From the NCBI GenBank assembly GCA_001179505.1, contig CDMY01000637.1, positions 1 through 37,792 on the forward strand: DNA of 37,792 nt. Direction: 5' to 3'. The notes under the pieces were generated by a model. The model searched no databases, was not told where the DNA came from, and saw only the letters and a program-made list of their open reading frames with translations. This document shows, in pieces, positions 183-36,564 of this stretch; position 1 is the first letter of the stretch, and each line of letters begins with the position of its first letter. The DNA is from Vitrella brassicaformis CCMP3155. Taxonomy: Eukaryota; Protista; Chromerida. Position numbers and translations under genes: made by a program.

Positions 183-3100
183 ATGGCAAAGCCTTCATCG
201 AGAGCAGCCATGGCGGCTGCGCCCCTTCCTCGGCGCCCCTTCCTCGGCGGCCTTCCCTGTCTGGTCGCCATCTGCACAAGCTTGCTCTCTGCCCCTGCGG
301 CACCGACAGTCAGCGGCAGGCCCCTCTCTCTCGACGCCACAAGCCACCAGGCGTCGGCAGCGGGGCTCCATCCACCCCGACACACTTACGGCGGCCACCC
401 ACCGAGAAGGCGGCGGGCCCGGCGACTCGCTGACACACAGGGGGAGGAAGAGAAGGCCAACGTGATGCGAGTGGAGATGGCGCCCGACAGGCTGGTGCAC
501 ATCGAGTCGACGCCCTTTCTGCGCTTCCGGCCGACCAATGGCGACGTCGAGGAGGCCGGGAGAGAGTGGCGGAGGCAGCAGGTGACCATTGAGAATAAGG
601 AGAGCGTCCCGCTGCCCATCTACGTCACTCTGGAGGGCAAGGACAAGGGCCTCTTTGCAGTGGAGCTCAGCCCCGATGACGCGGGGCGTGGTGCACAGCT
701 GCCCGCCGCCCTCCTGCTGCAGCCAAACGCGCCACAGACGCTGCACGTGACCATGTGGAAACCACAGAAATCTGCCCGTTCTGTTGGCTTCACGGCTGTG
801 GCTGCACTGGTGGGGACGGCTTACCCGTCGGAGGGCAGCGTGTCATCCTTCTATGCCGACGAGGAGCGGCAGACTGACGGGCGGACAGTGGTGCAGGTGC
901 CATTGCTGGCCGACACGCGAGCGGCGGGCGACAAAATGGCGTTTGACGTGTCTGTGCCGGCCAGCACCTTTGTGGGCTTCACGCTGCCGGGCGAGGACTT
1001 CTCCCACGGCCACGGCATTGAGAGCATCCTGGACATCGACGTCGAGGCGACGGAGAATACCACTGCTGAGGGCAAGAACAAGGGCGAGACGGCAAATGTC
1101 GTCTTCTGGGGCGACTCGGATGTCTTCAAGGTGGGCTGGGCGAGCGACGTACGAACATATATGTGGCTCTTTACTGACTGACCCTTCTCACCCTCTCCCA
1201 TCCATACTGCCTGCGTGCATTTAGGTGTCCTTTCCCTCAGTGTCACCCATGGATGTCGACGCGAGTGATGGTGTGGGTCATGCAGACGGCCTGCACCTGG
1301 GGGTAGGGAAGACGCCAGTGCGTGTCTTCTTCGGCGGGCCGACCAAGGGCACCCACAAGGGGTGCCTGGCCGTCATCGGCAGGGCCTCCTCCGCCGCCAT
1401 CGGCTGCTTCTCGGGCACCGTGTTGGACCACGTGCACCTTCATCCCGTCATCGACGTGCCGCAGGTGACAGTGCTGCCGGACGACCCCAACGGCAAGACG
1501 CCCACCAAGACGGTCGAGCTCAAGGCCGAGCGGTCACACACGCACGAGCAGGACAGCAACGCCCGCTTTCGCGTGACCAAGTACCAGTGGCGCGTGCACC
1601 AGCACCCCAACCTCGCTGCCGACCAAACACAGCCGCCGGTGAAGGTGTGGGCGAGCGGGGAGAGGGACGGCAGCAATGTCAATGTGACGTTGGGGCTGGG
1701 CAGCCACATTGCGATGCTGACCATATGGGATAACGAGGGCAAGGCCATCACCGACTCGGCCTTGATGCACGTGGTCACCACCAGACAGATCCCCGGGCCG
1801 AAGGTGACCCCACACACGCAAACATGGGGGAGATTTCTCGCCTCATTGCGTGTTGTGTGTTGTGTGTGTGCAGATATCTCTGTATGAGCCGGTAGACAAC
1901 GGCACCACTCTGAAGAGCCTGCTCAACGCCAACCAGGGTGACTTGCCCAAGCCGGTCTTTGTGTCGTCGCCAGCGTCCGTCAAGTCCCTCCCGCCCCCAC
2001 TCGCCAGCGCCATGGCCGTCACTCCGCCCACACCCACACTCGTCAAGTACTTTGAAGTGCCCATACAGGTAGGTCAGCAGGTTGGCCGCTTATCGATCGA
2101 CCGCAGAGACAGCACACAGACGGGCGCAAGCGTGATGCCGATCGGCATCATGATGTGATGTGTGTGTGATCAGAACGCCCCCAATGGCCGGCCCTTCATC
2201 GGCGGTGAGGGCTCTACATACGACAAGGGTGTCATGGTCCGGGCGACGGCCAGAGTGCCGTGGAGGTACCTGCAGGCGGCAAGGCGCGCCTCATCCCACC
2301 GCCCGATGCAGCGGCTCATGAACCAGCAGCAGGGTGCCCTTGACGAGGAGGACGACCATGTCATCCTCAATGCGTGGGGCGGCGAGGGTGTGGTGGGCAG
2401 CGTCCGTGTGGGCGGGCACGTGCTGCTGCACAACGAGCGCGGCGAGCACAAGATCCGGGGCAACGCGTACAAGGCTGACGAGGTGGTTGACTTGGAGGTC
2501 AGGTTCGCCGTCGAGCAGCCCACTACCGCACTCAGGGTGAGAAAGGGATGCACACACACAGTCAGACAGACACTCCCATGGCTTCATCTCCCACTGTCTA
2601 TCTCTCTGTGTGTGGTGTGGTATAGCTGCTGGTCAACGGCGATCCCTTTCCCCTCTTTCGGTCTGAGTGGCTGGCCAAGCACGGCACCAGCAGCAACCAT
2701 GACTTGAAGCACCTAGCCGCCCCCGCCGCTGCCCCCTCCCTCCCCCACCTGAATCCCAATGTGCTGGTCTTCCACGACACATCGACAGCCAAGCCGTTCA
2801 TCAACAAGATCGATCCACAGGCACTCCCGCATCCGCCATCCAGACAGCCAGAGGGAGGGGGCGCCCCTACGGCCATGATCCAGGTGTATGGCAACGCGCT
2901 GCTCAAGACGGAGGCGCCCGGCAGGGGTGTGGTGGTCAAGTGGGGTGACGATGTGATCACGCCCGAGGGCGTGGCGCACGACCGGCTGACGATTGAGGTG
3001 CCGCTGAAGGGCGTGGGTGGTGGGGCGATGACCATGCAGCAGGGGGAGAGGGGGGACGTGAGGGTGGGGGTGGCGGTGAAGATCGGCGACGACGAGTCCA

Positions 3101-4176
3101 ACACAGCCACATTCACCTTCTCTGACAAACTCGCAAAGGGCAATGGTACGGTATGGTACGCCCCCGTGCACCCGCCCGTCTCTCCCACACACACATTCTA
3201 TGTGTGCTGCATGCAGATGGCCCAGGTCCGTCCAAGCCGCTGCCCAAGATAGCATGGTACCCTCCTTTCGATTTCCCCATCGAGGGCGGCCCCACCGCCG
3301 CCACGATGGGCCCCGACGGCAACCTCTACGTCGGCACCGTCTCGGGCCTCATCCATGTGGTCCAGCTGGCGCACCAGTACAACGGCCCGGACGCCGCCCC
3401 CCTCACCGTCCGGAGTCACTCCACCATCCGGGCTCTCAAGGATGTCTACGGCGACGAGCATAGCATCCTCGGCATACGAATCGACCCCTACTCGGACCCC
3501 AACGCTCCCCACCTCTACGTGGCACACGCCGACATCTACGCCAAGGGCCACGGGTGCGACCGGGTGCTCAAGGAGGGGCTGGGCTTCATCGGGCGGATCA
3601 GCAGGATCACGCTGCGGCCGGAGGGGGACGAGCAGCCGCCGGCTGTGCAGCCGGTGCTGAGCAATTTGCCGTGCAGCAATGGGGACGTGTGTGTCAACGG
3701 GATGGATTTCGACTTCAACGGGACCATGTATTGGGGCCAGGGAAGCGTCACCAACGGCGGGCCGGCCGAGTGCTTCTTCGGCATGATTGAGGAGAGCCCT
3801 CTCTCAGGAGCCATCGGCAAGGTCAGTCAGTGGCCTGTGGGTGGGTGTGGGTTTAAACATGAACACGCATACAGCTGTCTGACTGTGGGTGGTGTCATCC
3901 ATTCATCCATCGATCAGGCCGAGATAAGGCGGCCCGACTTCAACGGCTACGTCATGTACGACTACAAGGACACCGTCTACACGCGCCACAAGGGGCTGGC
4001 GGGCAAGCCGGCGCCCAACGACCAGCGCAACGCCAGTCTGTTCGACATCAGCCCCAAAACCAGAGGCGTCGACTGGCACGCCGCGGGGTTCCACAACAGC
4101 TGGGAGCCCGTTGTCACCACAAAAGGTCGATCACGACCCCACCCATCCACTCACTCACCCACCCACACAAAAGTAC

Positions 4177-4207
<31 letters not shown>

Positions 4208-6869
4208 TATGCAGGTGACATCTGGTGCTCGGCGAATGGTGCGTCTGAGGGTCTGGGTAAGCGGTTCGACAACGCAGGTGTGGACGTCTTTCGCAGCCGC
4301 GTGGCGGCCGCCCAGGCGACGGCCAAGAAGACGGGCAGGGACCCCGCCACCATCGAGTGCGGCTTGGGGTGGCCCGAATGCCAACCCAGACAAGTGCCCT
4401 CATACTCGTCCGACAGAGTGAGTCAGTGAGTGAGCTCATCGCCCGCACACTCATGTGCATCGTGGTTGGTATGTTGGTTTGCGCCTGTGTGTGTGTGGCA
4501 GATATACGGTCCTCTGACGGGCCGCACATATCACGGGTACCCCAACCCCAACAGGGCGCAGAGCGACCCCCGTCAGTGGTACTTTTACGCTGCCTCCGAC
4601 CCGCCCAATCCGGCTCGCTACCAGCAGGGCTACCACATCGACTCGTCCACCAACGGAATCACCGAGTTCAGAGGTATGGTGGCCACAACAGCCAGCCAGC
4701 CAGCCAGCCATTGTGTCTGTCGGTGTTTGCGCATCGTGCGCTTGTGTGTGGGGCATGGCTTTGCAGGTGCTTGCTTCGGCGGCCAGCTGCGAGGCGACCT
4801 CGTCGCAGCCCAATGGAACCAGAAAGTCTTTCGGTCAGAGAAGAGACACCCACCACCCAGACGGACATCTCTCTGTGTTGTATGGTGTTTTGTGTGTATC
4901 AGTGTGCATCGTACGGCGTCCGACGCAGGGGATGGCTTCGCCCCGTCGGTTGCGGTGTCTGTGTTGAGCAACCAGCTCAAGGCCCTCGGCCTGGAGTACG
5001 GCCCCGGCTGTCAGCTCTTAGGCCTGGACTTCAGCGGCAACCGGCTCACCGTGCTCACACCGAAGGAGGAGCACCACCACCACGACCATGACGCAGAGGC
5101 AGACGACGGGCATGAGCCTGTGGTACGCAGAGAGAGAGAGAGAGAGAGAGAGAGCAGGTACACTGTGTGTGGGTGTGTGGGTCTACAGGTATGGGACGTG
5201 ACGCCGTGGCGAGGGAATGTGGACCACGACCAGAGGGTGGTCATCGGCGGCAGGAGGTTCCTCTCCAACAACGGGCTGGCGAGGCCCAACGGCATCACCA
5301 TCGGCCCACTGGCGTGCATCATCACAGACATCCAGGACATCTTCATGTCGTGCGCCGTGTCGATGGACCAGCCGCCGCCCTCACCTGCCCCGCCACACAA
5401 GACCTACCCCGCAGGCACGGCCACCCACCGCACGAGCAAGGGCATCGAGGTGCCGCTTGATGCGTGGACCGACATGACTGTGACCTTCGATGACGGCACC
5501 AATGTCACACTCGAGAGGGCCTTTCTCTTTCACAAACCTTCGCCCGTCGCTGAGCCATTCGGTGTGCTGGCGGGGGGAGGGCCGTGTCTCTCTCTCTCTC
5601 TCTCTCCCCTCTATAGCAATTTTTGTGTGTGTGTGTGTTTATGCAGAGGGCGAGATTGACCATGCTGATTGCGTCTTGGACGACGTCGACTTGCCCGACT
5701 ACGACGTCAAGTGGCTCGACTTCGTGCCGTCCGTCTACCTGTGCCAGCAGGAGTGCGTCCACCAGACCGACCCCCCCTGCGACGCCTTCAGCTATGTCCA
5801 CACAGAGCCCCTCTCCGCCATGAACTGCTGGCTCAAGCACATCACCAGCGCCACACCCACAGGCACATCAGCCGACCTCTCCACCGAGAGCACTCTGCGC
5901 CGGATGGCAGACACCAGCAGCCAGCTCCGCGTGACGCCCTCTCAGTTCGTCCGCAAGGCTGGCGTCACCATGGGCCCGCGTGTGTGTGGCGAGAGCAGGC
6001 AGTGGAAGTGGCTGAGGTCCGAGGCGCTGAAGCGCCTGCAGGAGATGCCTGTGATGCAGCTGGAGGGGAGGGAGGAGGGGATGATGCATCCGGCGGGCAG
6101 CAAGCCCGACGACGGCGAGGAGAAGATCCTCCCCGACACAAACACCAACGCCGCGATGGGCTACCGCGGCATTGCCGAGCAGGGGAGCCAGCATCACGGT
6201 TTTGACAACAGCCCCCTCTCGGGCCTGCCCTTTGGCCATGCCCAGCGGGCCGACGAGTGGCCCAATGGCGAAGACGCAGCCAAGCTGGCCGTTGGCGCAT
6301 CGGACAACACCACCAAGAGCGGCAGCCCCAGCCCCAGCAGCAGCAGCAAGAGCAGCAGCAAGTGCTCCGCGAGAAATGTCTACTTCACTGGGGACATCGC
6401 CCGTGCACTTGCCGATGTGCCGTCTGCCGACGCGTGTCAGGCGGCCTGCCGCCAAATGCGTGAGTGTCTCTTCTGGACGTTCATTGTCGGCATGAGGGAG
6501 AGGGTGGGCAAACAGGCCGACAACTGCGTGTAAGCACAGGACGACGGACCACTCGAATCAACCAACCCACATGTGTCTCCATCCATCCATTCTGTGTTTC
6601 GTGTGTGTGTGCACAGGCTGAAGCACACGGCCGGCAGCGTCAAGCCCAACGCAGAGGGTGCGCTTGAGACCATCAGCGGGCCGAAGGAGTGCTCTGCAGA
6701 CACAGACACACCCACGAGGAGGCGTAACAACAACAACAACAACAACAAGGGCAAGGGGAGGGGCAAGGGGAAGGGCGGGTGGAAAGGAAAGGGCAGGCAG
6801 GGCAAGTGGATGGGCAAGGGGAAGGGCAAGTGGGTGGGCAAGGGGAAGGGCAAGACACCGGGCGGGTGA
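183..6869 (+). CDS. Large secreted or signal-anchored multidomain protein, 1862 aa: Ig-like/PKD-like, PA14-like, glucose/sorbosone-dehydrogenase-like beta-propeller, IPT/TIG, two PAN/apple domains, Lys/Gly/Trp-rich tail
   Basis: 14 exons, all GT-AG with consistent phases (5589 nt): 183-1130, 1225-1803, 1874-2068, 2174-2536, 2626-3145, 3217-3821, 3918-4125, 4215-4417, 4502-4673, 4767-4833, 4903-5122, 5189-5561, 5647-6529, 6617-6869. N-terminal hydrophobic stretch LPCLVAICTSLLSA. Propeller motifs MGPDGNLYVGT, NGMDFDFNGTMYWGQGSVTNGG, ESPLSGAI, YHGYPNPNRA. PAN patterns C..DVDL...CQQEC...CDAFSY...CWLK and CQAACRQMRECLFWTF. Domain names are from motif recognition, not a database search. Confidence 0.85.
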
Positions 6870-10512: not shown

Positions 10513-11018
10513 CATGAATATGGATGCCTTCTGGCGTTTGATGCTTGACGCCATTCAGAGGGCGGGATGCAGAATGTGAAGACACCACTCACTGACCCAC
10601 TCACTCAACTGGCTGTGTCATAGTGTCGAATTAAGTGGGGACGTGTGCCATGTGTGCAAGTCTCCCACAGCCACAGAAGTGAATGAATTGAGCATACACA
10701 CCTACCTACACGTACAGTAAACGCACTCGTTCGTCCGCTCACTCACGCCAATCAACGAACGACACACGAAAAGAACCAAGGGAACGAAGGGATTAGAAGC
10801 AAGGAAAGAAGGAAAGAAGAATGAACTACAAGAGAAGACAGCACGCTCCCCCTCACTCACCACACGCCCACGAGGGACAAAGAGAGACACACACATGACG
10901 CCCACACGCACCGCTCCACTCACTGCTCCCATCTGTCACAAATACAATCCATCCATTCCCCCCACCATCACAGCACGGCACAGCACAGCCACGAACATGC
11001 ACCCGGCTATCTAATTTC

Positions 11019-12685
11019 CTATGGCGCCATGAGGCCTTCCACGATCTTCTGGATGGCTCCTCCTCTCCGTCCTGGGACGGCCGGCGCATTGCCCGCTGAC
11101 CTCCTCGACGGAGCCATGAGTCCCTGCAAGAGCTTCTCAAAGCTCTGCTCCAGGCGGCCGACCCGACCCAGAAGCTCTTCAATGGTCTTCTTCATAGACT
11201 GGTTGCCCGTCCTCAGCTCCTCGTTGGCCTTCTTGAGGCCCTCAATCGTCTCGGCCTGGTTCTTGTCGGCCTTGATGTCGTCTTGAGCAGCGGCCATTTT
11301 GACAAAGTCAATCCGGCCCGACGACTCATCACCGGCAGTGGCGCCCTCTTCCAGACGAGCAATGCGATCCAGCATGGCCTCGTTGGCCTTTCTTAAGCCG
11401 TCCATGGCCTTGTTCATATCCTCGTTGGCCGTCCTCAGCTCCCCATTGGCCTTCTTGAGGCCCTCAATCGTCTTGGCCTGGTCTTGCCCAACAGCCACCT
11501 TCCGCAGCGCCTCAATCGGACCCAGCGGGCGCTGCTCATCGGCACCACTGTCCTGCTCCAGCCGCGTGATGCGATCCATCACGGTCTCATTGGCTTTCCT
11601 CAATCGCTCAAGCGTGTCGTTAACGTCAGCCATTGTCCCGGTAAGGCTATCGATGTTCTTGGCCATCCCCTTGTTGGTCTTGTTCAGTCGCTCCTTTTCG
11701 TCGATATAGTCGTCGATAAGGTCTTGAGTGACGGCCATTTGTGTGTAGAGCAGTTGTGTCATGTCGATGGTCAGTTGGCCAGCAGGCCCCTCTCCCTTCT
11801 GCGCATCGCCACCTTGTTCGTCACTGGCCCGGGACACGAACGTCTTGACTGCCGATGGGAAGACCTTCTGGACCTGAGCAGCTGCCAGACCGAGCCGCGC
11901 ATCGCCGTCAGAGAGCACACGCAGCTGTCGGAACGCCTGATACGCCGCCGACCGATCAGTGTTGCTCCACTCGGCCATCGATGAGGGCACCTGTTCGCCG
12001 TCTGCGAGTCGGTCGCTGCCTCGTACCTCGAAGGCGCCGGCAACAACACGGCGGCTGACGGTTTCGTCCCCGCAGTGGCACTCCCTTAAGGCCACGAGTT
12101 CGGTGGTGGTGACGCCGTCATCGATCAACGCTCCTCCCTGCACCAGCAGATTCCCCTCCGCGAGGATGTCGCCATTCTGTCCATTCAGGACAGGATTGCC
12201 CGAGATTATCTCTGCATCGAGAAAGACAGCCATCACACAGAGGGAACAAAAGAATAAAGCACGGTAGTGCGTCGGTCGATCCTCACTCTTGCAGCCGCCT
12301 GCGTCTGCCCTGCAGCCAGTCAGGACACACCATCACAAACATCATTCCAATCCGTTCAATTTCAAACGCGCCCGTCAGTCTTGTTTTATACAGCCGCTCA
12401 CTTTTTGTCGGCGTCACAATCGGCTTCCTTCTGCAGCGTCTCCGCCAACCGGTTCAGGAGAGCCTCGTCGTCGTCGTCGTTATCGCCGGCAGCCCTGACA
12501 TTGCTGCCAGACGTCTGGGCGGTCGAACCCGTCGAACCCTCTGTTGCCGTGTCCTTGGCTGCGGGGCGGTACTCTGACCCGTCAAGATTGAAATAACTGA
12601 AGCTCGGGTCCAGGCCACTCCCCGACTGCTGTGCGGCGACGGTGAGGCACGCAGCGAGGAGGAAAGTCACGCGGACGGCGGCCAT
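11019..12685 (-). CDS. Secreted 499-aa protein with a peptidase-S74-like (intramolecular chaperone) domain followed by three coiled-coil repeats; resembles a tail spike or fibre
   Basis: Exons 12685-12402, 12309-12287 (23 nt), 12211-11019; 1500 nt, phases consistent. Signal peptide MAAVRVTFLLAACLTVAA. S74-like motifs VAGAFEVRGSDRL, GLAAAQVQKVFPSAVK, LTIDMTQLLYTQMAVTQDL. Repeats end in RITRLE, RIARLE, RVGRLE. Confidence 0.75.
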
Positions 12686-12719
12686 TTGGTGTGCCGGATC
12701 AACGGCAACGGCTCGTAAA

Positions 12720-13920
12720 TTCGTGGAGAGGCGCACGCTGCCCTTGCCCGACGTCGTCAATGACGCTTGGATGGACCACATCACGTAAGGCACAGAAAAC
12801 TTGTTGTAACACGCATACAGGATCTCGTGTGTCGTGTGCGCCGCCATTTGTCCATTCATCTCAGGTCAGAGTGTGTGTTGCGTGAGGCGCAGAGGCTGCG
12901 GGAGTGCCCCGAGGTGCACGATCACAAAGAGCGCTGGAGACTGTTCAACCGGTAAGGAAAGAACCTACACGTACTATGTGGTGTCACAAGGCGATTTTCG
13001 ATGGATGCCCTGTGTGTTTCCTGCAGGTCGCTTCCACTCCATTTCCTCACCGAAGGAGGCCAACCTCCGTCGCTCTTGCAACCAAACGGGTCTGTGAATG
13101 GGGCGTCGAGGGCGGCGGGCTGAGGACAGCGCTGCGGAAGGCACTGCTAGGCGGAGGGGATTGATCCGACGAGGTCACTCGATGCTTACAGGAGGTGCGT
13201 AGATATCACACACACGCAATACACCTCCACATTCGCTGACCGTGTTGTGTGTGTGGTGGTCAGGCGTGCGTCCACCGCTCTGTTGAGGTATGTATCGCTG
13301 CGCCACTCCTCGCGTGTCTGCGTCAGTCCAGGAGTGCGCGAGGCGCCGTCACGGCACCCTCTGCGAGAGGATAGCACAGAAGTGGCGGGAGAGTGCCCCT
13401 GCTGCTGCCTCAACAGACAAGGGTGCTGACCCGCCGCCACATCAGGACTCTCAGCCTCTTCCTCCGTCACAATCCATTGAGGAAGCCACACCAGCCAGCG
13501 ACCTCCCAGCCCTCTCTCCCCCCTGCCGGCCTGCCAGCTGGCCCCTCCGTCAGCACACGGCAAGTAAGGCAGCGACAGCAAGTGGCTGGACTCCCTGCCG
13601 CCCAGGCCAGGAAGGGGCGAGCTGTGCAGCTCATCGAGACATACGGAAGAGGCCAACAAGAGCAGGAAGCGCAAGGCGGGCGACGGGGAGGATGGGAGGA
13701 GCCCAAGGTGCGCCAGCACGCACCTGTGGGCAGCACCGGCAAGATGCAGCTGCGCAGCAGGTGACGATCGAATGGGTGGCACGGGTTGACACGAAAAAAC
13801 ACTTCAAGCTAACGGATTGCTGCTGTCCACCTCTTTCCTTTTCAGGACTGGTCGTCGTGGCGCTTCCTCCTCGTCTGCCGTGATGGACGCCAAGGGCTTC
13901 CTTCGTCAGCAACTTCGAGG
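12720..13920 (+). pseudogene. Probable degenerate multi-exon gene remnant
   Basis: Splice-like boundaries (gtaagg near 12785 and 12951) and coding-like pieces (LPDVVNDAWMDHI; RLRECPEVHDHKERWRLFNR; QECARRRHGTLCERIAQKWRE), but phases are inconsistent and stops intervene. Confidence 0.3.
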
Positions 13921-34894: not shown

Positions 34895-35297
34895 CAGTGA
34901 GTGCATTCGCCAGGCTTCTCTGACCGTGACGTAGGGGATGCGCTCCTGCATCTCAGTATACTATGGGCCATCTCGCCCACCTCCCTCGCCCCCCCAGCCT
35001 GTGTCCACCCAGCCATCAGCAGCAGCAAAAGATGATCCTCACTTGCGACTGCCGCGGAGTGCGGCATGCGCATGGGAACCAGCTGATGAGACGACGGTAG
35101 ACGACGGCGGTTCGACTCAGAATTCACTCGAATGGCTCTCTTTATCGAACAACCGAAAGCTCTGCAACGCTGCAACGCCTGTGAGAGCAGAAGCACTGCG
35201 CAGAAGGGCGATCCACTCAGCTCGCATGATGCGGCCATAAGCAGGGAGGCTTGCCGACGGCGATGCTGCCAGGAATCTTCGAAAAAGGAGCCCGTCT
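34895..35297 (+). repeat. 403-bp segment identical to 36565-36967
   Basis: Base-for-base match at offset 1670 (identical ORF translations), ending exactly at the N gap. Confidence 0.95.
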
Positions 35298-35597
35298 NNN
35301 NNNNNNNNNNNNNNNNNNNNNNNNNNNNNNNNNNNNNNNNNNNNNNNNNNNNNNNNNNNNNNNNNNNNNNNNNNNNNNNNNNNNNNNNNNNNNNNNNNNN
35401 NNNNNNNNNNNNNNNNNNNNNNNNNNNNNNNNNNNNNNNNNNNNNNNNNNNNNNNNNNNNNNNNNNNNNNNNNNNNNNNNNNNNNNNNNNNNNNNNNNNN
35501 NNNNNNNNNNNNNNNNNNNNNNNNNNNNNNNNNNNNNNNNNNNNNNNNNNNNNNNNNNNNNNNNNNNNNNNNNNNNNNNNNNNNNNNNNNNNNNNNN
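35298..35597. other. Assembly gap (300 N)
   Basis: Run of N. Confidence 1.
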
Positions 35598-35934
35598 CAA
35601 TGCAGTGCAGTGCAGTGCTCGCACATCATACATACAGCACTAGCATCACTGCAGCAGCTTCTCCATCGGCCACGTTGAGCGTCAGCGACAGACACATCAC
35701 GGCCAGCCAATTAGCAGGACATCATCTTCACACAAACACAAACACACCCACACACACATCCACCCACCTTCCCACCCACCCACCCACCCACCCACAAAGA
35801 GAGGATACAAGTAGGCACTAATTGCTCAGTGAGGCCTTCGCGCGCGGTGTGTTGATTGGCTCAATAGACAAGAAAAACGCATGAAAAAGAGCCATACATA
35901 CTCCCTTGGCCCAGACTCACAGCCATTGCGGTTA

Positions 35935-36564
35935 TCAGCACTTGAGCAGAGGCCTGGCGAGTTCTTGTTCATCCGCCCGGCCCCCTGCCTGGTGCGGTTG
36001 CTGTTGTCCGTCTGACTCGCCGCCTTGCCGCGGCTTGCGGCGCTGCCTGAGCTCCGGCGAGATATCACCGTGATCACCGTCTGCTGGGTGGCGGCCTTTG
36101 GGCGTCTGCACCGGGGCGTCGTGTCCGAGTGACGGCGGAGAGGGGCCAAACGAGGCGGCCGAGAGGGATTCGGGAGAGGAAGCAGGCTGCTCACCTGCTC
36201 CACAGGACGGGGCGGCTTGGTCCAGTTCTTCCTCCCTGAGCTCAAGATCATCAACAGACACAGACAGACACACACGGACACACATGTTCGTTTGCTGCAG
36301 CTGCGTATGGCTCTACTGACCTCCGCTTCTCCTCAAAGCGCCTGGCGAAGTCCTGCGCTTCAGCGAGATCTCTCACCAAAAACTTGAACATTTTCATGCT
36401 CTCGTCATCCTTGAAACGGCCTCGCGCGTCCATACACTCGCACAGCCCCAGCAGCTGGCCAGGGATCAGCTTGTTGAGGTCCAGCTCACGGATCATCTGC
36501 GACTCCGAATCCATGCCCAGCTCGACCATGGCCGCATTGACCCTGTCCGCGAGAACGCTGTGGG
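35935..36564 (-). CDS. Body of a small hypothetical gene (184 aa if joined to 1-43), 5'-truncated at 36564
   Basis: Exons 36564-36321 (...ADRVNAAMVELGMDSESQMIRELD...RRFEEKR) and 36235-35935 (EEELDQAAP...LLKC*), joined by a phase-2 GT-AG intron. Its start codon is found only at window position 43. Confidence 0.65.

What the first reader, a model, noticed from the sequence alone, without database searches (positions are those of the whole stretch)
11019..12685. Secreted eukaryotic protein built like a phage tail spike: beta-rich stalk, S74-like chaperone domain, trimer-motif coiled coils
Seen: signal peptide, a Gly/beta-branched stretch (GDILAEGNLLVQGGALIDDGVTTTELVA), then GSDRL...GLAAAQVQKVFPSAVK...LTIDMTQLLYTQMAVTQDL and three helical repeats. 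Established: Peptidase_S74 (PF13884) intramolecular chaperones, as in phage endosialidase tail spikes and MYRF, carry SDxRxK...GxIAQ(E/D)V..vfPeAV...l.vdy...l.A.qeL followed by a coiled coil and drive trimeric beta-helix folding. Inference: an intron-bearing, domesticated tail-fibre-like trimeric surface protein in an apicomplexan relative. This is the best candidate here for an undescribed system.
Basis: partly seen in the sequence, partly recalled or inferred. Interest (0 to 1): 0.8.

Follow-up and report, generated by a model that had tools for sequence, protein, structure and literature searches.

The report
Algal secreted fibre, dead phage-type cap
The coral-associated alga Vitrella brassicaformis expresses a spliced gene for a probably secreted protein whose centre is a distant, apparently no longer self-cutting relative of the trimer-forming "chaperone" cap of phage tail fibres and animal MYRF, followed by an unusually long triple-module coiled coil; it is one more member of an unstudied family specific to this alga.

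Summary
On the minus strand, 12685-11019, lies a three-exon gene of Vitrella brassicaformis CCMP3155. Its spliced CDS equals the annotated 499-aa protein, and transcript contigs from two studies remove both introns.

Pfam PF13884 does not hit it. Five other lines place residues ~185-330 in the Peptidase_S74/ICA fold:
- A profile search reaches genuine S74 proteins.
- hhalign gives 95-99% against phage-only and metagenomic S74 sets, even without the coiled coil. Shuffled controls fail.
- PHROGs hits fall on tail-fibre C-termini.
- ESM Atlas neighbours are S74 clusters.
- The AF2 model's top PDB matches are the known ICA structures, though weakly.

The cleavage centre is degenerate. No family member has the Ser-x4-Lys dyad, and the aligned Lys column is an invariant Pro. 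The S74-invariant Gln is Ala here.

My best reading is a secreted homotrimeric fibre. A permanently attached pseudo-chaperone would nucleate a short beta stalk and a triplicated RhxxhE coiled coil ending in a conserved GLMAP tail. Trimer state, secretion, lack of cleavage and function are inferred, not shown.

At least 14 Vitrella paralogues form one clade. UniProt auto-labels some of them S74, and no paper was found. This scan already reported paralogues of this family elsewhere in the same genome. I rate it a new variant of a known kind, of moderate interest.

The parts
11019..12685 (-). Whole coding span of the gene (3 exons, 499 codons plus stop). It encodes annotated protein P0001 of Vitrella brassicaformis CCMP3155.
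   Evidence: Spliced CDS equals P0001 exactly. 100% hit to the NCBI/UniRef protein. Spliced transcript contigs.
12402..12685 (-). Exon 1: leader peptide plus a Ser/Thr/Asp-rich acidic N-terminal extension (residues 1-94). The extension has no counterpart in the paralogues I aligned.
   Evidence: The transcript contig starts at 12699.
12629..12685 (-). Putative ER signal peptide, residues 1-19 (n-region Arg, hydrophobic core, small residues before QQ).
   Evidence: Hydropathy about 2-2.5 over residues 1-18, and no other hydrophobic stretch in the protein. Similar leaders in paralogues P0002, 5, 8, 9, 12, 17 and 19. SignalP was not available.
12287..12309 (-). 23-nt micro-exon encoding ADAGGCK(K). 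It carries the conserved Cys 'cap' that precedes the beta stalk.
   Evidence: Joints at 12308/12401 and 12211/12287 in RNA-derived contigs. The same micro-exon, in the same phase, is in paralogue P0002.
11019..12211 (-). Exon 3: stalk, S74-like domain, coiled coils and stop codon.
12024..12209 (-). Short beta-rich stalk (residues 104-165). It starts with I-I-S-G-N-P and ends with the strand VAGAFEV. It holds the conserved C-x-C-G motif (ECHCG, 12083-12069).
   Evidence: Translation. Short strands are predicted at low confidence. Paralogues have the same module in 1 to many copies, each starting at an exon start.
11967..12023 (-). Degenerate cleavage loop (residues 166-184, from R-G-S-D to M-A-E-W). 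It is the positional equivalent of S-D-x-R-x-K-x-N of working S74 domains. Ser168-Asp169 is kept in this protein, Arg is replaced by invariant Gln176, and Lys by invariant Pro178.
   Evidence: MAFFT A3 and global hhalign agree on this mapping. No S-x4-K occurs anywhere in the 75 aa upstream of FPSAV in any family member.
11721..11966 (-). S74/ICA-like core (residues 185-266): helix alpha1 (AAYQAFRQL), a beta hairpin, the LGLAAAQVQKVFPSAV element, an acidic loop, and the TIDMTQLLYTQMAVTQD start of the central helix.
   Evidence: hhalign 95-99% against three S74 sets. BLASTP to P0019, a genuine PF13884 protein, gives E 8e-12. AF2 pLDDT is 76-98 here. Foldseek and VIA match 7dc3, 4uw8, 3gud and 3gw6.
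11109..11762 (-). Long coiled-coil region (residues 253-470) in three modules. Each module ends in the RhxxhE trimer motif: RITRLE 11573-11556, RIARLE 11366-11349, RVGRLE 11165-11148.
   Evidence: Regex and translation. AF2 gives a single helix over residues 253-327 at pLDDT 92-98. Only generic coiled-coil Pfam hits appear. The motif equals MyRF R695-E700 (PMC8326128).
11022..11123 (-). C-terminal tail with two copies of the family's terminal motif G-L-M-A-P (11123-11109 and 11036-11022). The second copy is the very C-terminus.
   Evidence: GLMAP-COOH is also the C-terminus of P0002, 3, 6, 10, 11, 14, 16, 17 and 30.

Best explanation
This is an expressed nuclear gene of Vitrella brassicaformis for a secretory-pathway protein built, from N to C, as follows:
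- a signal peptide;
- an acidic Ser/Thr-rich extension;
- a Cys cap;
- a short beta-strand stalk ending in a C-x-C-G motif;
- a degenerate Peptidase_S74/ICA (intramolecular chaperone) domain;
- a triplicated coiled coil with three RhxxhE trimer motifs;
- a conserved GLMAP C-terminus.

Shown: the gene model and its splicing, homology of the core to S74/ICA domains, absence of the Ser-Lys dyad and of the invariant Gln, and monophyly and expansion of the family in Vitrella.

Inferred mechanism: as in phage tail fibres and MyRF, three chains are brought into register by the C-terminal three-helix coiled coil and the alpha1/alpha3 collars of the ICA-like domain. That would template folding of the upstream beta stalk. 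The catalytic Lys (here Pro178) and the cleavage-site Gln (here Ala214) are gone, so the domain is not cut off. It stays as a permanent trimerisation hub between a short stalk and a long coiled-coil rod. The conserved Cys cap and C-x-C would then lock the trimer by disulfides in an oxidising, extracellular or luminal setting.

The product would be a rod-like homotrimer, plausibly a cell-surface, cell-wall or matrix fibre. Its binding partner and biological role are unknown.
For: Gene and expression:
- The 100% hit is to a V. brassicaformis protein, and the spliced CDS equals P0001.
- Both introns are removed in transcript contigs of runs X6 and X1.

S74 identity:
- The family profile, searched against 1.84 billion representatives, finds only 26 proteins. 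They include P0019 (E 2.2e-6), P0023 and P0025. These carry PF13884; P0019 scores 57.5 bits, E 1.6e-15, with SDEKFK.
- BLASTP of P0001 against P0019 gives 36% identity over 102 aa, E 8e-12.
- hhalign of the 15-sequence Vitrella-type core gives 97.7% (E 2.5e-12) against phage-only C-termini. It gives 97.8% (E 1.2e-12) against 63 metagenomic PF13884 proteins.
- With the coiled coil removed it still gives 96.5% and 95.0%. Column-shuffled controls reach no better than E 0.079.
- PHROGs tail-fibre C-termini hit 5 of 5 paralogues.
- In the ESM Atlas, 30 of 30 feature hits and 7 of 8 structure rows are PF13884 clusters, including MYRF.
- The AF2 model has pLDDT 76.7. Its Foldseek ranks 1-8 are all ICA structures, with 7dc3 at probability 0.98-0.99.
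- VIA-align gives Z 5.6 over 92 aa to 7dc3, 5.0 to 3gw6, 4.6 to 4uw8 and 4.4 to 3gud, all across the non-helical core.

Dead cleavage centre:
- No S-x4-K occurs in any family member, and several have no Lys at all in that 75-aa region. In contrast, 51 of 69 metagenomic S74 proteins have SDxxxK.
- The Lys column is an invariant Pro.
- The S74-invariant Gln (63 of 63) is Ala214 here.
- S587A and K592A abolish MyRF cleavage, and Q639 contacts the cleavage site (PMC8326128).

Retention of the C-terminal part:
- The RhxxhE and GLMAP motifs are conserved downstream of the domain across paralogues. This would not be expected of a discarded chaperone.

Long residence in the genome:
- The micro-exon and its phase are shared with P0002, and stalk modules sit one per exon.
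- The family forms one clade with SH-aLRT 99.
Against: - PF13884 itself gives no hit at E up to 10 for this protein or its close paralogues. PDB sequence and profile searches are empty.
- The structural matches are weak in absolute terms: Foldseek E >= 6.7e-3, TM 0.36-0.48, VIA Z 4.4-5.6. On their own they would not establish the fold.
- The alignment of the N-terminal loop to SDxRxK is low-confidence. A third MAFFT run (A9) placed it differently.
- P0001 itself keeps Ser168-Asp169, so cleavage with another base cannot be excluded.
- The signal peptide was judged by hydropathy only.
- Trimer state, disulfides, location and function are all untested.
Confidence: 0.65

Rival explanations
1. The domain is still a working self-cleaving chaperone. 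It trimerises, folds the stalk, then cuts at or near Ser168 using a different general base. The mature product would be the small N-terminal stalk, and the coiled-coil part would be released or serve a separate role.
For: P0001 keeps a Ser-Asp pair at the position aligned to the S74 nucleophile. Vitrella also has a canonical paralogue, P0019, with SDEKFK, so working S74 domains exist in this organism.
Against: The Ser is not conserved in the clade; the column reads A, D, L or T in other members. There is no Lys anywhere nearby, and the aligned Lys column is an invariant Pro. The invariant cleavage-site Gln is lost. K592A alone abolishes MyRF cleavage (PMC8326128). The strongest conservation lies downstream of the putative cut (core, RhxxhE, GLMAP), while the N-terminal part is short and variable.
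Confidence: 0.12
2. The S74 homology is correct, but the protein is not a surface fibre. The leader would send it to an internal compartment of the secretory system (an extrusome-like or microneme-like organelle, alveolar sacs, or the complex plastid), where it would act as a structural coiled-coil scaffold.
For: Alveolates route many leader-bearing coiled-coil proteins to internal secretory organelles, and chromerid plastid proteins also start with a signal peptide (general knowledge, not tested here). There is no transmembrane segment or GPI-like tail to hold the protein at the surface.
Against: The region after the leader is acidic (14% Asp, a DNDDDDE run), unlike a basic transit peptide. 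The paralogues go straight from the leader to the Cys cap. The conserved Cys cap and C-x-C fit an oxidising compartment but do not tell the lumen from the exterior.
Confidence: 0.2
3. The resemblance to S74 is due to chance or composition. The gene would encode an ordinary secreted coiled-coil protein, and the motif matches would be fortuitous.
For: Pfam PF13884 and PDB sequence searches are negative. The only Pfam hits are generic coiled-coil families below threshold. VIA also matches NadA and SadA coiled coils at similar Z.
Against: hhalign stays at 95-96.5% with the coiled coil removed, while shuffles give E >= 0.079. Hits to three independent S74 sets agree on the same columns. There is pairwise E 8e-12 to a 57-bit PF13884 protein. 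All four kinds of solved ICA structure are matched over the non-helical core, and they take Foldseek ranks 1-8 of 350,542 chains.
Confidence: 0.03

Closest known systems
MYRF/MyRF ICA domain with upstream beta-helical stalk (PDB 7DC3; Pfam PF13884 + PF13887)
   Same: It is the best structural match: Foldseek probability 0.98-0.99, and VIA Z 5.6 over 92 residues, model 39-142 to MyRF 598-705. Both have the same order of alpha1 helix, hairpin, G-x-x-A-x-x-V...P-x-A-V element and a long C-terminal helix. Both carry an RhxxhE element (MyRF R695-I-D-E-L-E700; here RITRLE). Both are eukaryotic, intron-bearing genes.
   Different: MyRF is a type-II ER-membrane transcription factor that must self-cleave through S587/K592. 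This protein has a cleavable-type leader, no DNA-binding domain and no transmembrane segment. It has Pro in place of the Lys and Ala in place of Q639. A further ~170 residues of coiled coil follow the domain.
Phage tail-fibre/tailspike C-terminal intramolecular chaperone domains (endoNF/K1F CIMCD 3GW6, T5 pb1 4UW8, GA-1 gp12 3GUD; T4-like and T5-like fibre C-termini)
   Same: The layout is a beta stalk followed by the chaperone domain. Profile-profile homology is 97.7%, E 2.5e-12, to phage-only sequences. PHROGs tail-fibre C-terminal hits are present. VIA gives Z 4.4-5.0.
   Different: Phage domains sit at the extreme C-terminus, carry the SDxRxK dyad and are discarded after folding. Here the dyad is absent, and the domain is internal and apparently retained. 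The stalk is very short (about 60 aa). The gene is nuclear, spliced and has a eukaryotic leader.
Vitrella paralogue P0019 (CEM34855, 276 aa, UniProt 'Peptidase S74 domain-containing protein')
   Same: Same organism, with a signal-peptide-like leader. It shares 36% identity over the core and an RhxxhE-type motif (RVNALE).
   Different: P0019 passes PF13884 at 57.5 bits and keeps SDEKFK and the invariant Gln. It lacks the repeat stalk, the C-x-C and the GLMAP tail, and it branches outside the pseudo-S74 clade.
Trimeric autotransporter adhesin coiled-coil stalks (NadA 6EUN, SadA 2YO3)
   Same: VIA Z 5.1-5.9 over the long helix. Both are extracellular trimeric rods.
   Different: The match covers the helix only. 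There is no sequence relationship, no membrane anchor domain and no YadA-type head. This is an analogy, not membership.

Membership tests
Peptidase_S74 / ICA domain (Pfam PF13884, PROSITE PS51688) | Hit to the curated Pfam model PF13884 at or above its gathering score (22 bits) | tested here: not met
   There is no PF13884 row at E up to 10 for P0001, its sub-regions, or paralogues P0002-P0005, P0009, P0014, P0015, P0017 and P0026. The same scan gives 57.5 bits for P0019.
Peptidase_S74 / ICA domain (Pfam PF13884, PROSITE PS51688) | Detectable homology of the core (alpha1 helix, G-x-I-A-Q-E-V...P-x-A-V element, start of the central helix) to genuine S74 domains | tested here: met
   hhalign gives 97.7-98.9%. 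It gives 95-96.5% without the coiled coil, and shuffled controls are negative. The profile search reaches PF13884 proteins at E 2e-6 to 4e-4 in 1.84 billion sequences. BLASTP to P0019 gives E 8e-12.
Peptidase_S74 / ICA domain (Pfam PF13884, PROSITE PS51688) | Fold like solved ICA domains (7DC3, 3GW6, 4UW8, 3GUD) | tested here: inconclusive
   ICA structures take Foldseek ranks 1-8, but E is 6.7e-3 at best and TM is 0.36/0.48. VIA Z is 4.4-5.6, within the range the tool calls middling. The model is a monomer of an obligate trimer. The ranking supports the fold; the scores alone do not.
Peptidase_S74 / ICA domain (Pfam PF13884, PROSITE PS51688) | Catalytic Ser-Lys dyad in S-D-x-R-x-K (endoNF S911/K916, MyRF S587/K592) | tested here: not met
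   No S-x4-K occurs upstream of the core in any clade member, and P0001 has one Lys in 75 aa, inside the QKVFP helix. The aligned Lys column is invariant Pro178 and the Arg column is invariant Gln176. The dyad's necessity comes from PMC8326128.
Peptidase_S74 / ICA domain (Pfam PF13884, PROSITE PS51688) | Invariant Gln of G-x-I-A-Q-E-V (MyRF Q639, which contacts the cleavage site) | tested here: not met
   It is Gln in 63 of 63 metagenomic S74 proteins and in P0019. It is Ala214 in P0001 and Gln in only 2 of 13 clade rows.
Peptidase_S74 / ICA domain (Pfam PF13884, PROSITE PS51688) | C-terminal three-helix coiled coil with an R-h-x-x-h-E element that drives trimerisation | tested here: met
   At sequence level, RITRLE at 316 directly follows the core, two more copies lie downstream, and the motif is present in nearly all paralogues and in P0019, P0021 and P0023. 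AF2 gives a long helix at pLDDT 92-98. The trimer state itself was not tested.
Peptidase_S74 / ICA domain (Pfam PF13884, PROSITE PS51688) | Homotrimer formation and autoproteolytic release of the domain | not testable with these tools
   Only single-chain AF2 is available. This needs a multimer model and biochemistry.
Bactofilin / polymer-forming cytoskeletal (PF04519), the UniRef name of paralogue P0002 | Pfam bactofilin hit on the repeat stalk | tested here: not met
   There is no PF04519 hit for any paralogue. There is only a 0.81 Atlas feature lead for the P0002 stalk, below the tool's 0.9 level.

The most novel reading that the evidence does not exclude
Chromerid algae captured the phage tail-fibre stalk-plus-chaperone module independently of MYRF. 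In Vitrella they turned it into a lineage-specific toolkit of extracellular homotrimeric fibres. The chaperone lost its protease chemistry and became a permanent trimerisation hub. Stalk length is tuned by exon-sized repeat modules, and rod length by duplicating the coiled-coil module, three times in this gene. A conserved GLMAP C-terminus would serve as an anchoring or sorting signal. That would make this a eukaryotic structural-protein family of phage ancestry, working in a different way from both phage fibres and MYRF.
Probability: 0.3. Interest if true: 0.7.

Novelty: new variant of a known kind. Interest (0 to 1): 0.5.

Why it matters
The ICA/S74 domain is known in two roles. In phage fibres it is a disposable folding cap. 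In MYRF it is the self-cleaving switch of one animal and amoebozoan transcription factor.

A clade of at least 14 spliced, expressed, leader-bearing genes in a close photosynthetic relative of apicomplexans keeps the fold and has lost the cutting chemistry. That would be a third use of the module, as a permanent trimerisation hub in secreted fibres. It would also be a natural experiment separating the domain's chaperone and trimerisation function from its protease function.

This particular gene is the clade member with the shortest stalk and the longest, triplicated coiled coil. That makes it a convenient construct for testing whether the dead domain still nucleates trimers. The family may also bear on the cell wall, sporangium or surface biology of chromerids, which is almost unexplored at the protein level.

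Tried and rejected
- Direct Pfam scans of the whole ORF, of residues ~1-179 of exon 3, and of the 117-aa core gave no S74 hit, only sub-threshold coiled-coil families.
- phmmer and a 5-sequence profile against PDB sequences found nothing relevant.
- The first AF2 run used 25 sequences and was too poor to rely on (pLDDT 55.8). I collected 63 PF13884 proteins and refolded with them.
- The word search with P0019 found only itself, so no donor lineage could be named. The tree leaves the deep order unresolved, with long branches. I therefore make no claim on phage versus bacterial versus viral donor, or on independence from MYRF.
The stretch includes a P0001-specific 5-residue insert and is not conserved.
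- The bactofilin reading of the stalk, taken from the UniRef name of P0002, is not supported by Pfam, and the Atlas lead is weak.
- DNA-level tandem duplication of the three coiled-coil modules was not detected by TRF. The modules are diverged at the DNA level, so the triplication is not recent.
- tblastn found no second family copy in this window.
- Plastid targeting was considered and judged unlikely because of the acidic post-leader region. It was not formally tested.
- Literature searches for Vitrella with tail fibre, endosialidase or S74 found no paper.
Full report
**1. What is there**

The window is a contig of Vitrella brassicaformis CCMP3155. The 405-aa ORF at 12236-11022 (minus strand) is 100% identical to an NCBI/UniRef 'unnamed protein product / uncharacterized protein' of 499 aa, P0001, whose longest contig has the window's length.

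Mapping that protein back gives three exons:
- exon 1, 12685-12402;
- exon 2, a 23-nt micro-exon at 12309-12287;
- exon 3, 12211-11019 including the stop.

The introns are GT..AG, 92 and 75 nt. The spliced 1500-nt CDS translates exactly to P0001.

Logan contigs of four public runs were laid on 10700-13000. One 2000-nt contig (run X6) and one 223-nt contig (run X1, a different study) skip exactly 12211/12287 and 12308/12401. A genomic run (X3) is collinear. The gene is therefore transcribed and spliced as annotated. The transcript contig begins at 12699, so the ATG at 12685 is its first.

**2. Anatomy**

- Residues 1-19 are a hydrophobic leader.
- Residues 20-94 are an acidic Ser/Thr/Asp-rich stretch, absent from the paralogues I aligned.
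- The micro-exon supplies a conserved Cys cap (GGCKK).
- Residues 104-165 are a short Gly/beta-branched stalk that ends in C-x-C-G and the strand VAGAFEV.
- Residues 166-184 are a loop with invariant Gln176, Pro178, Ser180 and A-E-W.
- Residues 185-266 are the conserved core (AAYxAFRQL, LGLAAAxVxKxFPSAV, acidic loop, TIDxTQLxYTQMAVxQD).
- Residues 253-470 are coiled coil in three modules, each ending in R-h-x-x-h-E (316, 385, 452).
- The tail carries GLMAP twice, the second copy at the C-terminus.

There is no second hydrophobic segment.

**3. Is it an S74/ICA domain?**

PDB sequence searches are also empty.

(a) *Profile search.* A profile of the core was searched against 1.84 billion representatives and returned only 26 proteins. 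Most are Vitrella paralogues or short metagenomic contigs. The list also holds P0019 (E 2.2e-6), P0023 (8.6e-5) and P0025 (4.1e-4). P0019 passes PF13884 at 57.5 bits over the full model and has SDEKFKRNI. The other two reach the cut-off. P0001 and P0019 align pairwise at 36% over 102 aa, E 8e-12. P0019 in turn matches MyRF 7DC3 and T4-like and T5-like tail-fibre C-termini.

(b) *Profile-profile comparison.* I compared a 15-sequence alignment of the Vitrella-type core, with P0019 excluded, against three S74 sets.

| S74 set | Probability | E-value |
|---|---|---|
| Three phage fibre C-termini only | 97.7% | 2.5e-12 |
| Phage C-termini plus P0019, P0023, P0025 | 98.9% | 1.4e-17 |
| 63 metagenomic proteins carrying PF13884 | 97.8% | 1.2e-12 |

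With the coiled coil cut away the values are still 96.5% (E 9e-10) and 95.0% (E 3.7e-8). Column-shuffled versions of the query never beat E 0.079; of 20 shuffles, one failed to parse. Coiled-coil bias is therefore not the cause.

(c) *PHROGs.* Tail-fibre families match the same region through their last ~80 profile positions in all five paralogues tested. The best is 3.8e-5, and P0001 scores 0.002.

(d) *ESM Atlas.* All 30 feature neighbours are PF13884 clusters (score 0.91). Seven of eight structure rows carry PF13884, including the MYRF cluster.

(e) *Structure.* A first AF2 monomer from 25 sequences was poor (pLDDT 55.8). With 82 sequences the model of residues 146-335 reached 76.7, and 76-98 over residues 185-330.
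- Foldseek against 350,542 PDB chains puts ICA structures at ranks 1-8, and at 12 of the top 13: 7dc3 (three chains, probability 0.98-0.99, E 6.7e-3), 4uw8, 3gud and 3gw6.
- VIA-align gives Z 5.6 (92 aa, 4.5 Å; model 39-142 to MyRF 598-705), 5.0 (3gw6), 4.6 (4uw8) and 4.4 (3gud), all across the non-helical core.
- Unrelated rows such as NadA and SadA match only the long helix.
- These scores are modest, as expected for a monomer model of an intertwined trimer. I count them as consistent, not decisive.

Together these lines establish homology of the core to S74/ICA domains.

**4. What is different: the cutting chemistry is gone**

Working domains cleave at the Ser of S-D-x-R-x-K with the Lys as base. 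S587A or K592A abolishes MyRF cleavage, these residues equal endoNF S911 and K916, and Q639 is among the residues contacting the cleavage site (PMC8326128).

In the Vitrella clade:
- MAFFT and a global hhalign both place the phage S-D on P0001 Ser168-Asp169. After a P0001-specific five-residue insert, they place Arg on invariant Gln176, Lys on invariant Pro178 and Asn on invariant Ser180.
- That part of the alignment is low-confidence, and a third MAFFT run placed it elsewhere, so I also tested it without any alignment. No clade member has S-x4-K anywhere in the 75 residues before FPSAV. Several have no Lys there at all, and P0001 has one, inside the QKVFP helix. By contrast P0019 has SDEKFK, and 51 of 69 metagenomic S74 proteins have SDxxxK.
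- The Ser column itself varies (S, T, A, D, L).
- The S74-invariant Gln (63 of 63, and P0019) is Ala214 in P0001 and is kept in 2 of 13 clade rows.

By the family's defining catalytic features this is not a working S74 peptidase. It is a pseudo-enzyme version of the domain.

**5. What is kept: the trimer-making parts**

The R-h-x-x-h-E element right after the core (RITRLE) corresponds to MyRF R695-I-D-E-L-E700. There, R695 makes inter-helix salt bridges, and I696 and L699 are needed for trimerisation. The element is present in nearly every paralogue, in P0019, P0021 and P0023, and three times in P0001. As I recall it, not checked here, this is also the short-coiled-coil trimerisation motif of Kammerer and colleagues.

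Conservation continues beyond the domain into the coiled coil and the terminal GPIEAL..GLMAP motif. That is hard to reconcile with a cap that is thrown away.

The conserved Cys cap and the C-x-C before the domain suggest inter-chain disulfides, and so an oxidising compartment. This is inference.

**6. Family and history**

At 50% clustering the profile search finds at least 14 Vitrella genes: P0001, 2, 4, 5, 7, 8, 9, 11, 12, 17, 19, 26, 29 and 31. There are also relatives on short ENA and JGI metagenome contigs. One of those contigs sits beside a diphthamide-synthase gene. No hit was traced to any other named organism; the remaining hits are unnamed metagenome contigs.

UniRef already names P0005, 8, 9, 11, 17 and 19 'Peptidase S74 domain-containing protein', but not P0001. 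Some paralogues have MMETSP transcripts.

A quick maximum-likelihood tree on 96 columns puts all dyad-less members in one clade (SH-aLRT 99, stem 1.45 changes per site). P0019 and a metagenomic relative lie outside it. The deeper order is unresolved.

The P0002 gene has five exons. It shares the Cys-cap micro-exon and its phase with this gene, and each stalk module (IVAGNP, LIAGDP, VQAGDP) starts at an exon start. The family therefore diversified inside an intron-bearing genome, partly by exon-sized modules. This supports 'domesticated'. It says nothing about the donor, which I could not determine.

Within the clade, P0001 has the shortest stalk, a unique acidic N-terminal extension and the only triplicated coiled coil. 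The three modules are too diverged at DNA level for TRF to find them.

**7. Mechanism proposed**

Shown: gene model, expression, homology, loss of the dyad and the Gln, retention of the coiled-coil motif, clade structure.

Inferred: co-translational entry into the ER; C-to-N trimer nucleation by the three-helix bundle and the collars of the ICA-like domain; templating of the short stalk; no self-cleavage; disulfide locking. The result would be a rod-like homotrimer, with stalk tip and acidic extension at one end and a ~220-residue coiled coil ending in GLMAP at the other.

Function: a structural or adhesive fibre of the wall, surface or matrix is the most economical guess. An internal secretory organelle is a live alternative. 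Residual cleavage through another base is possible but unlikely.

**8. Novelty and score**

The domain, its phage origin and its use in MYRF are well known. Databases auto-label some paralogues. I found no paper on these algal proteins.

This scan has already reported paralogues of the same family on other pieces of this genome, with the same conclusion that the lysine is lost. I reached that conclusion independently here and re-derived the five-exon structure of one of those paralogues.

The gene is a new variant of a known kind: a catalytically dead, retained ICA domain in a secreted eukaryotic fibre. Interest is moderate, 0.5. It is surprising to specialists in phage fibres and MYRF, and readily testable, but function is unknown and the key properties (trimer, no cleavage, location) remain inferred.

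Noticed in passing
window 11022-11123 (and the C-termini of P0002, P0003, P0006, P0010, P0011, P0014, P0016, P0017, P0030): A strictly C-terminal G-L-M-A-P motif, usually preceded by GPIEAL.K, ends many family members. It occurs twice in this protein, 29 residues apart. No hydrophobic tail follows it. It could be a sorting, anchoring or processing signal. No known motif was matched.
   Followed up: partly
P0029 (CEL94505, 1154 aa, UniRef 'Tubulin--tyrosine ligase-like protein 9'): This annotated Vitrella protein is in the same 90% cluster as the 188-aa MMETSP transcript product P0010. It contains two RVGRLE motifs and ends in GLMAP. It looks like a gene-model fusion of a TTLL gene with one or two family members.
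   Followed up: no
P0020 / P0034 (JGI metagenome, 2045 and 2129 aa): These giant 'hypothetical proteins' match profile positions 25-80 of the family core (the AFEV-to-FRQL part) in six separate stretches, E 5.6e-6, without any PF13884 hit. This looks like a repeated use of the N-terminal half of the domain. It remains unexplained.
   Followed up: no
L005:1501-3051 (paralogue P0002, contig CDMY01000347): Each beta-stalk module begins at an exon start with [IL][IV]AG[ND]P, and the donor sites of two stalk introns are non-GT (AAGCTG...). This suggests exon-module duplication, and possibly non-canonical splice sites or small errors in my exon mapping.
   Followed up: partly
window 35001-36000: A sharp drop in G+C, to 0.39 against about 0.58 elsewhere in the window.
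   Followed up: no
window 183-6869: An earlier first-stage note (s1-227131) describes an 1862-aa secreted mosaic (sugar-dehydrogenase propeller plus PAN/apple domains) about 4 kb downstream of this gene's end, so two leader-bearing genes lie in one 13-kb stretch. I did not examine it.
   Followed up: no
P0024 (498 aa, unknown source): A highly repetitive protein whose repeat contains P-I-A-E-W-S-N hit the profile through that short word alone (E 2.3e-4). I treat it as a spurious match.
   Followed up: no
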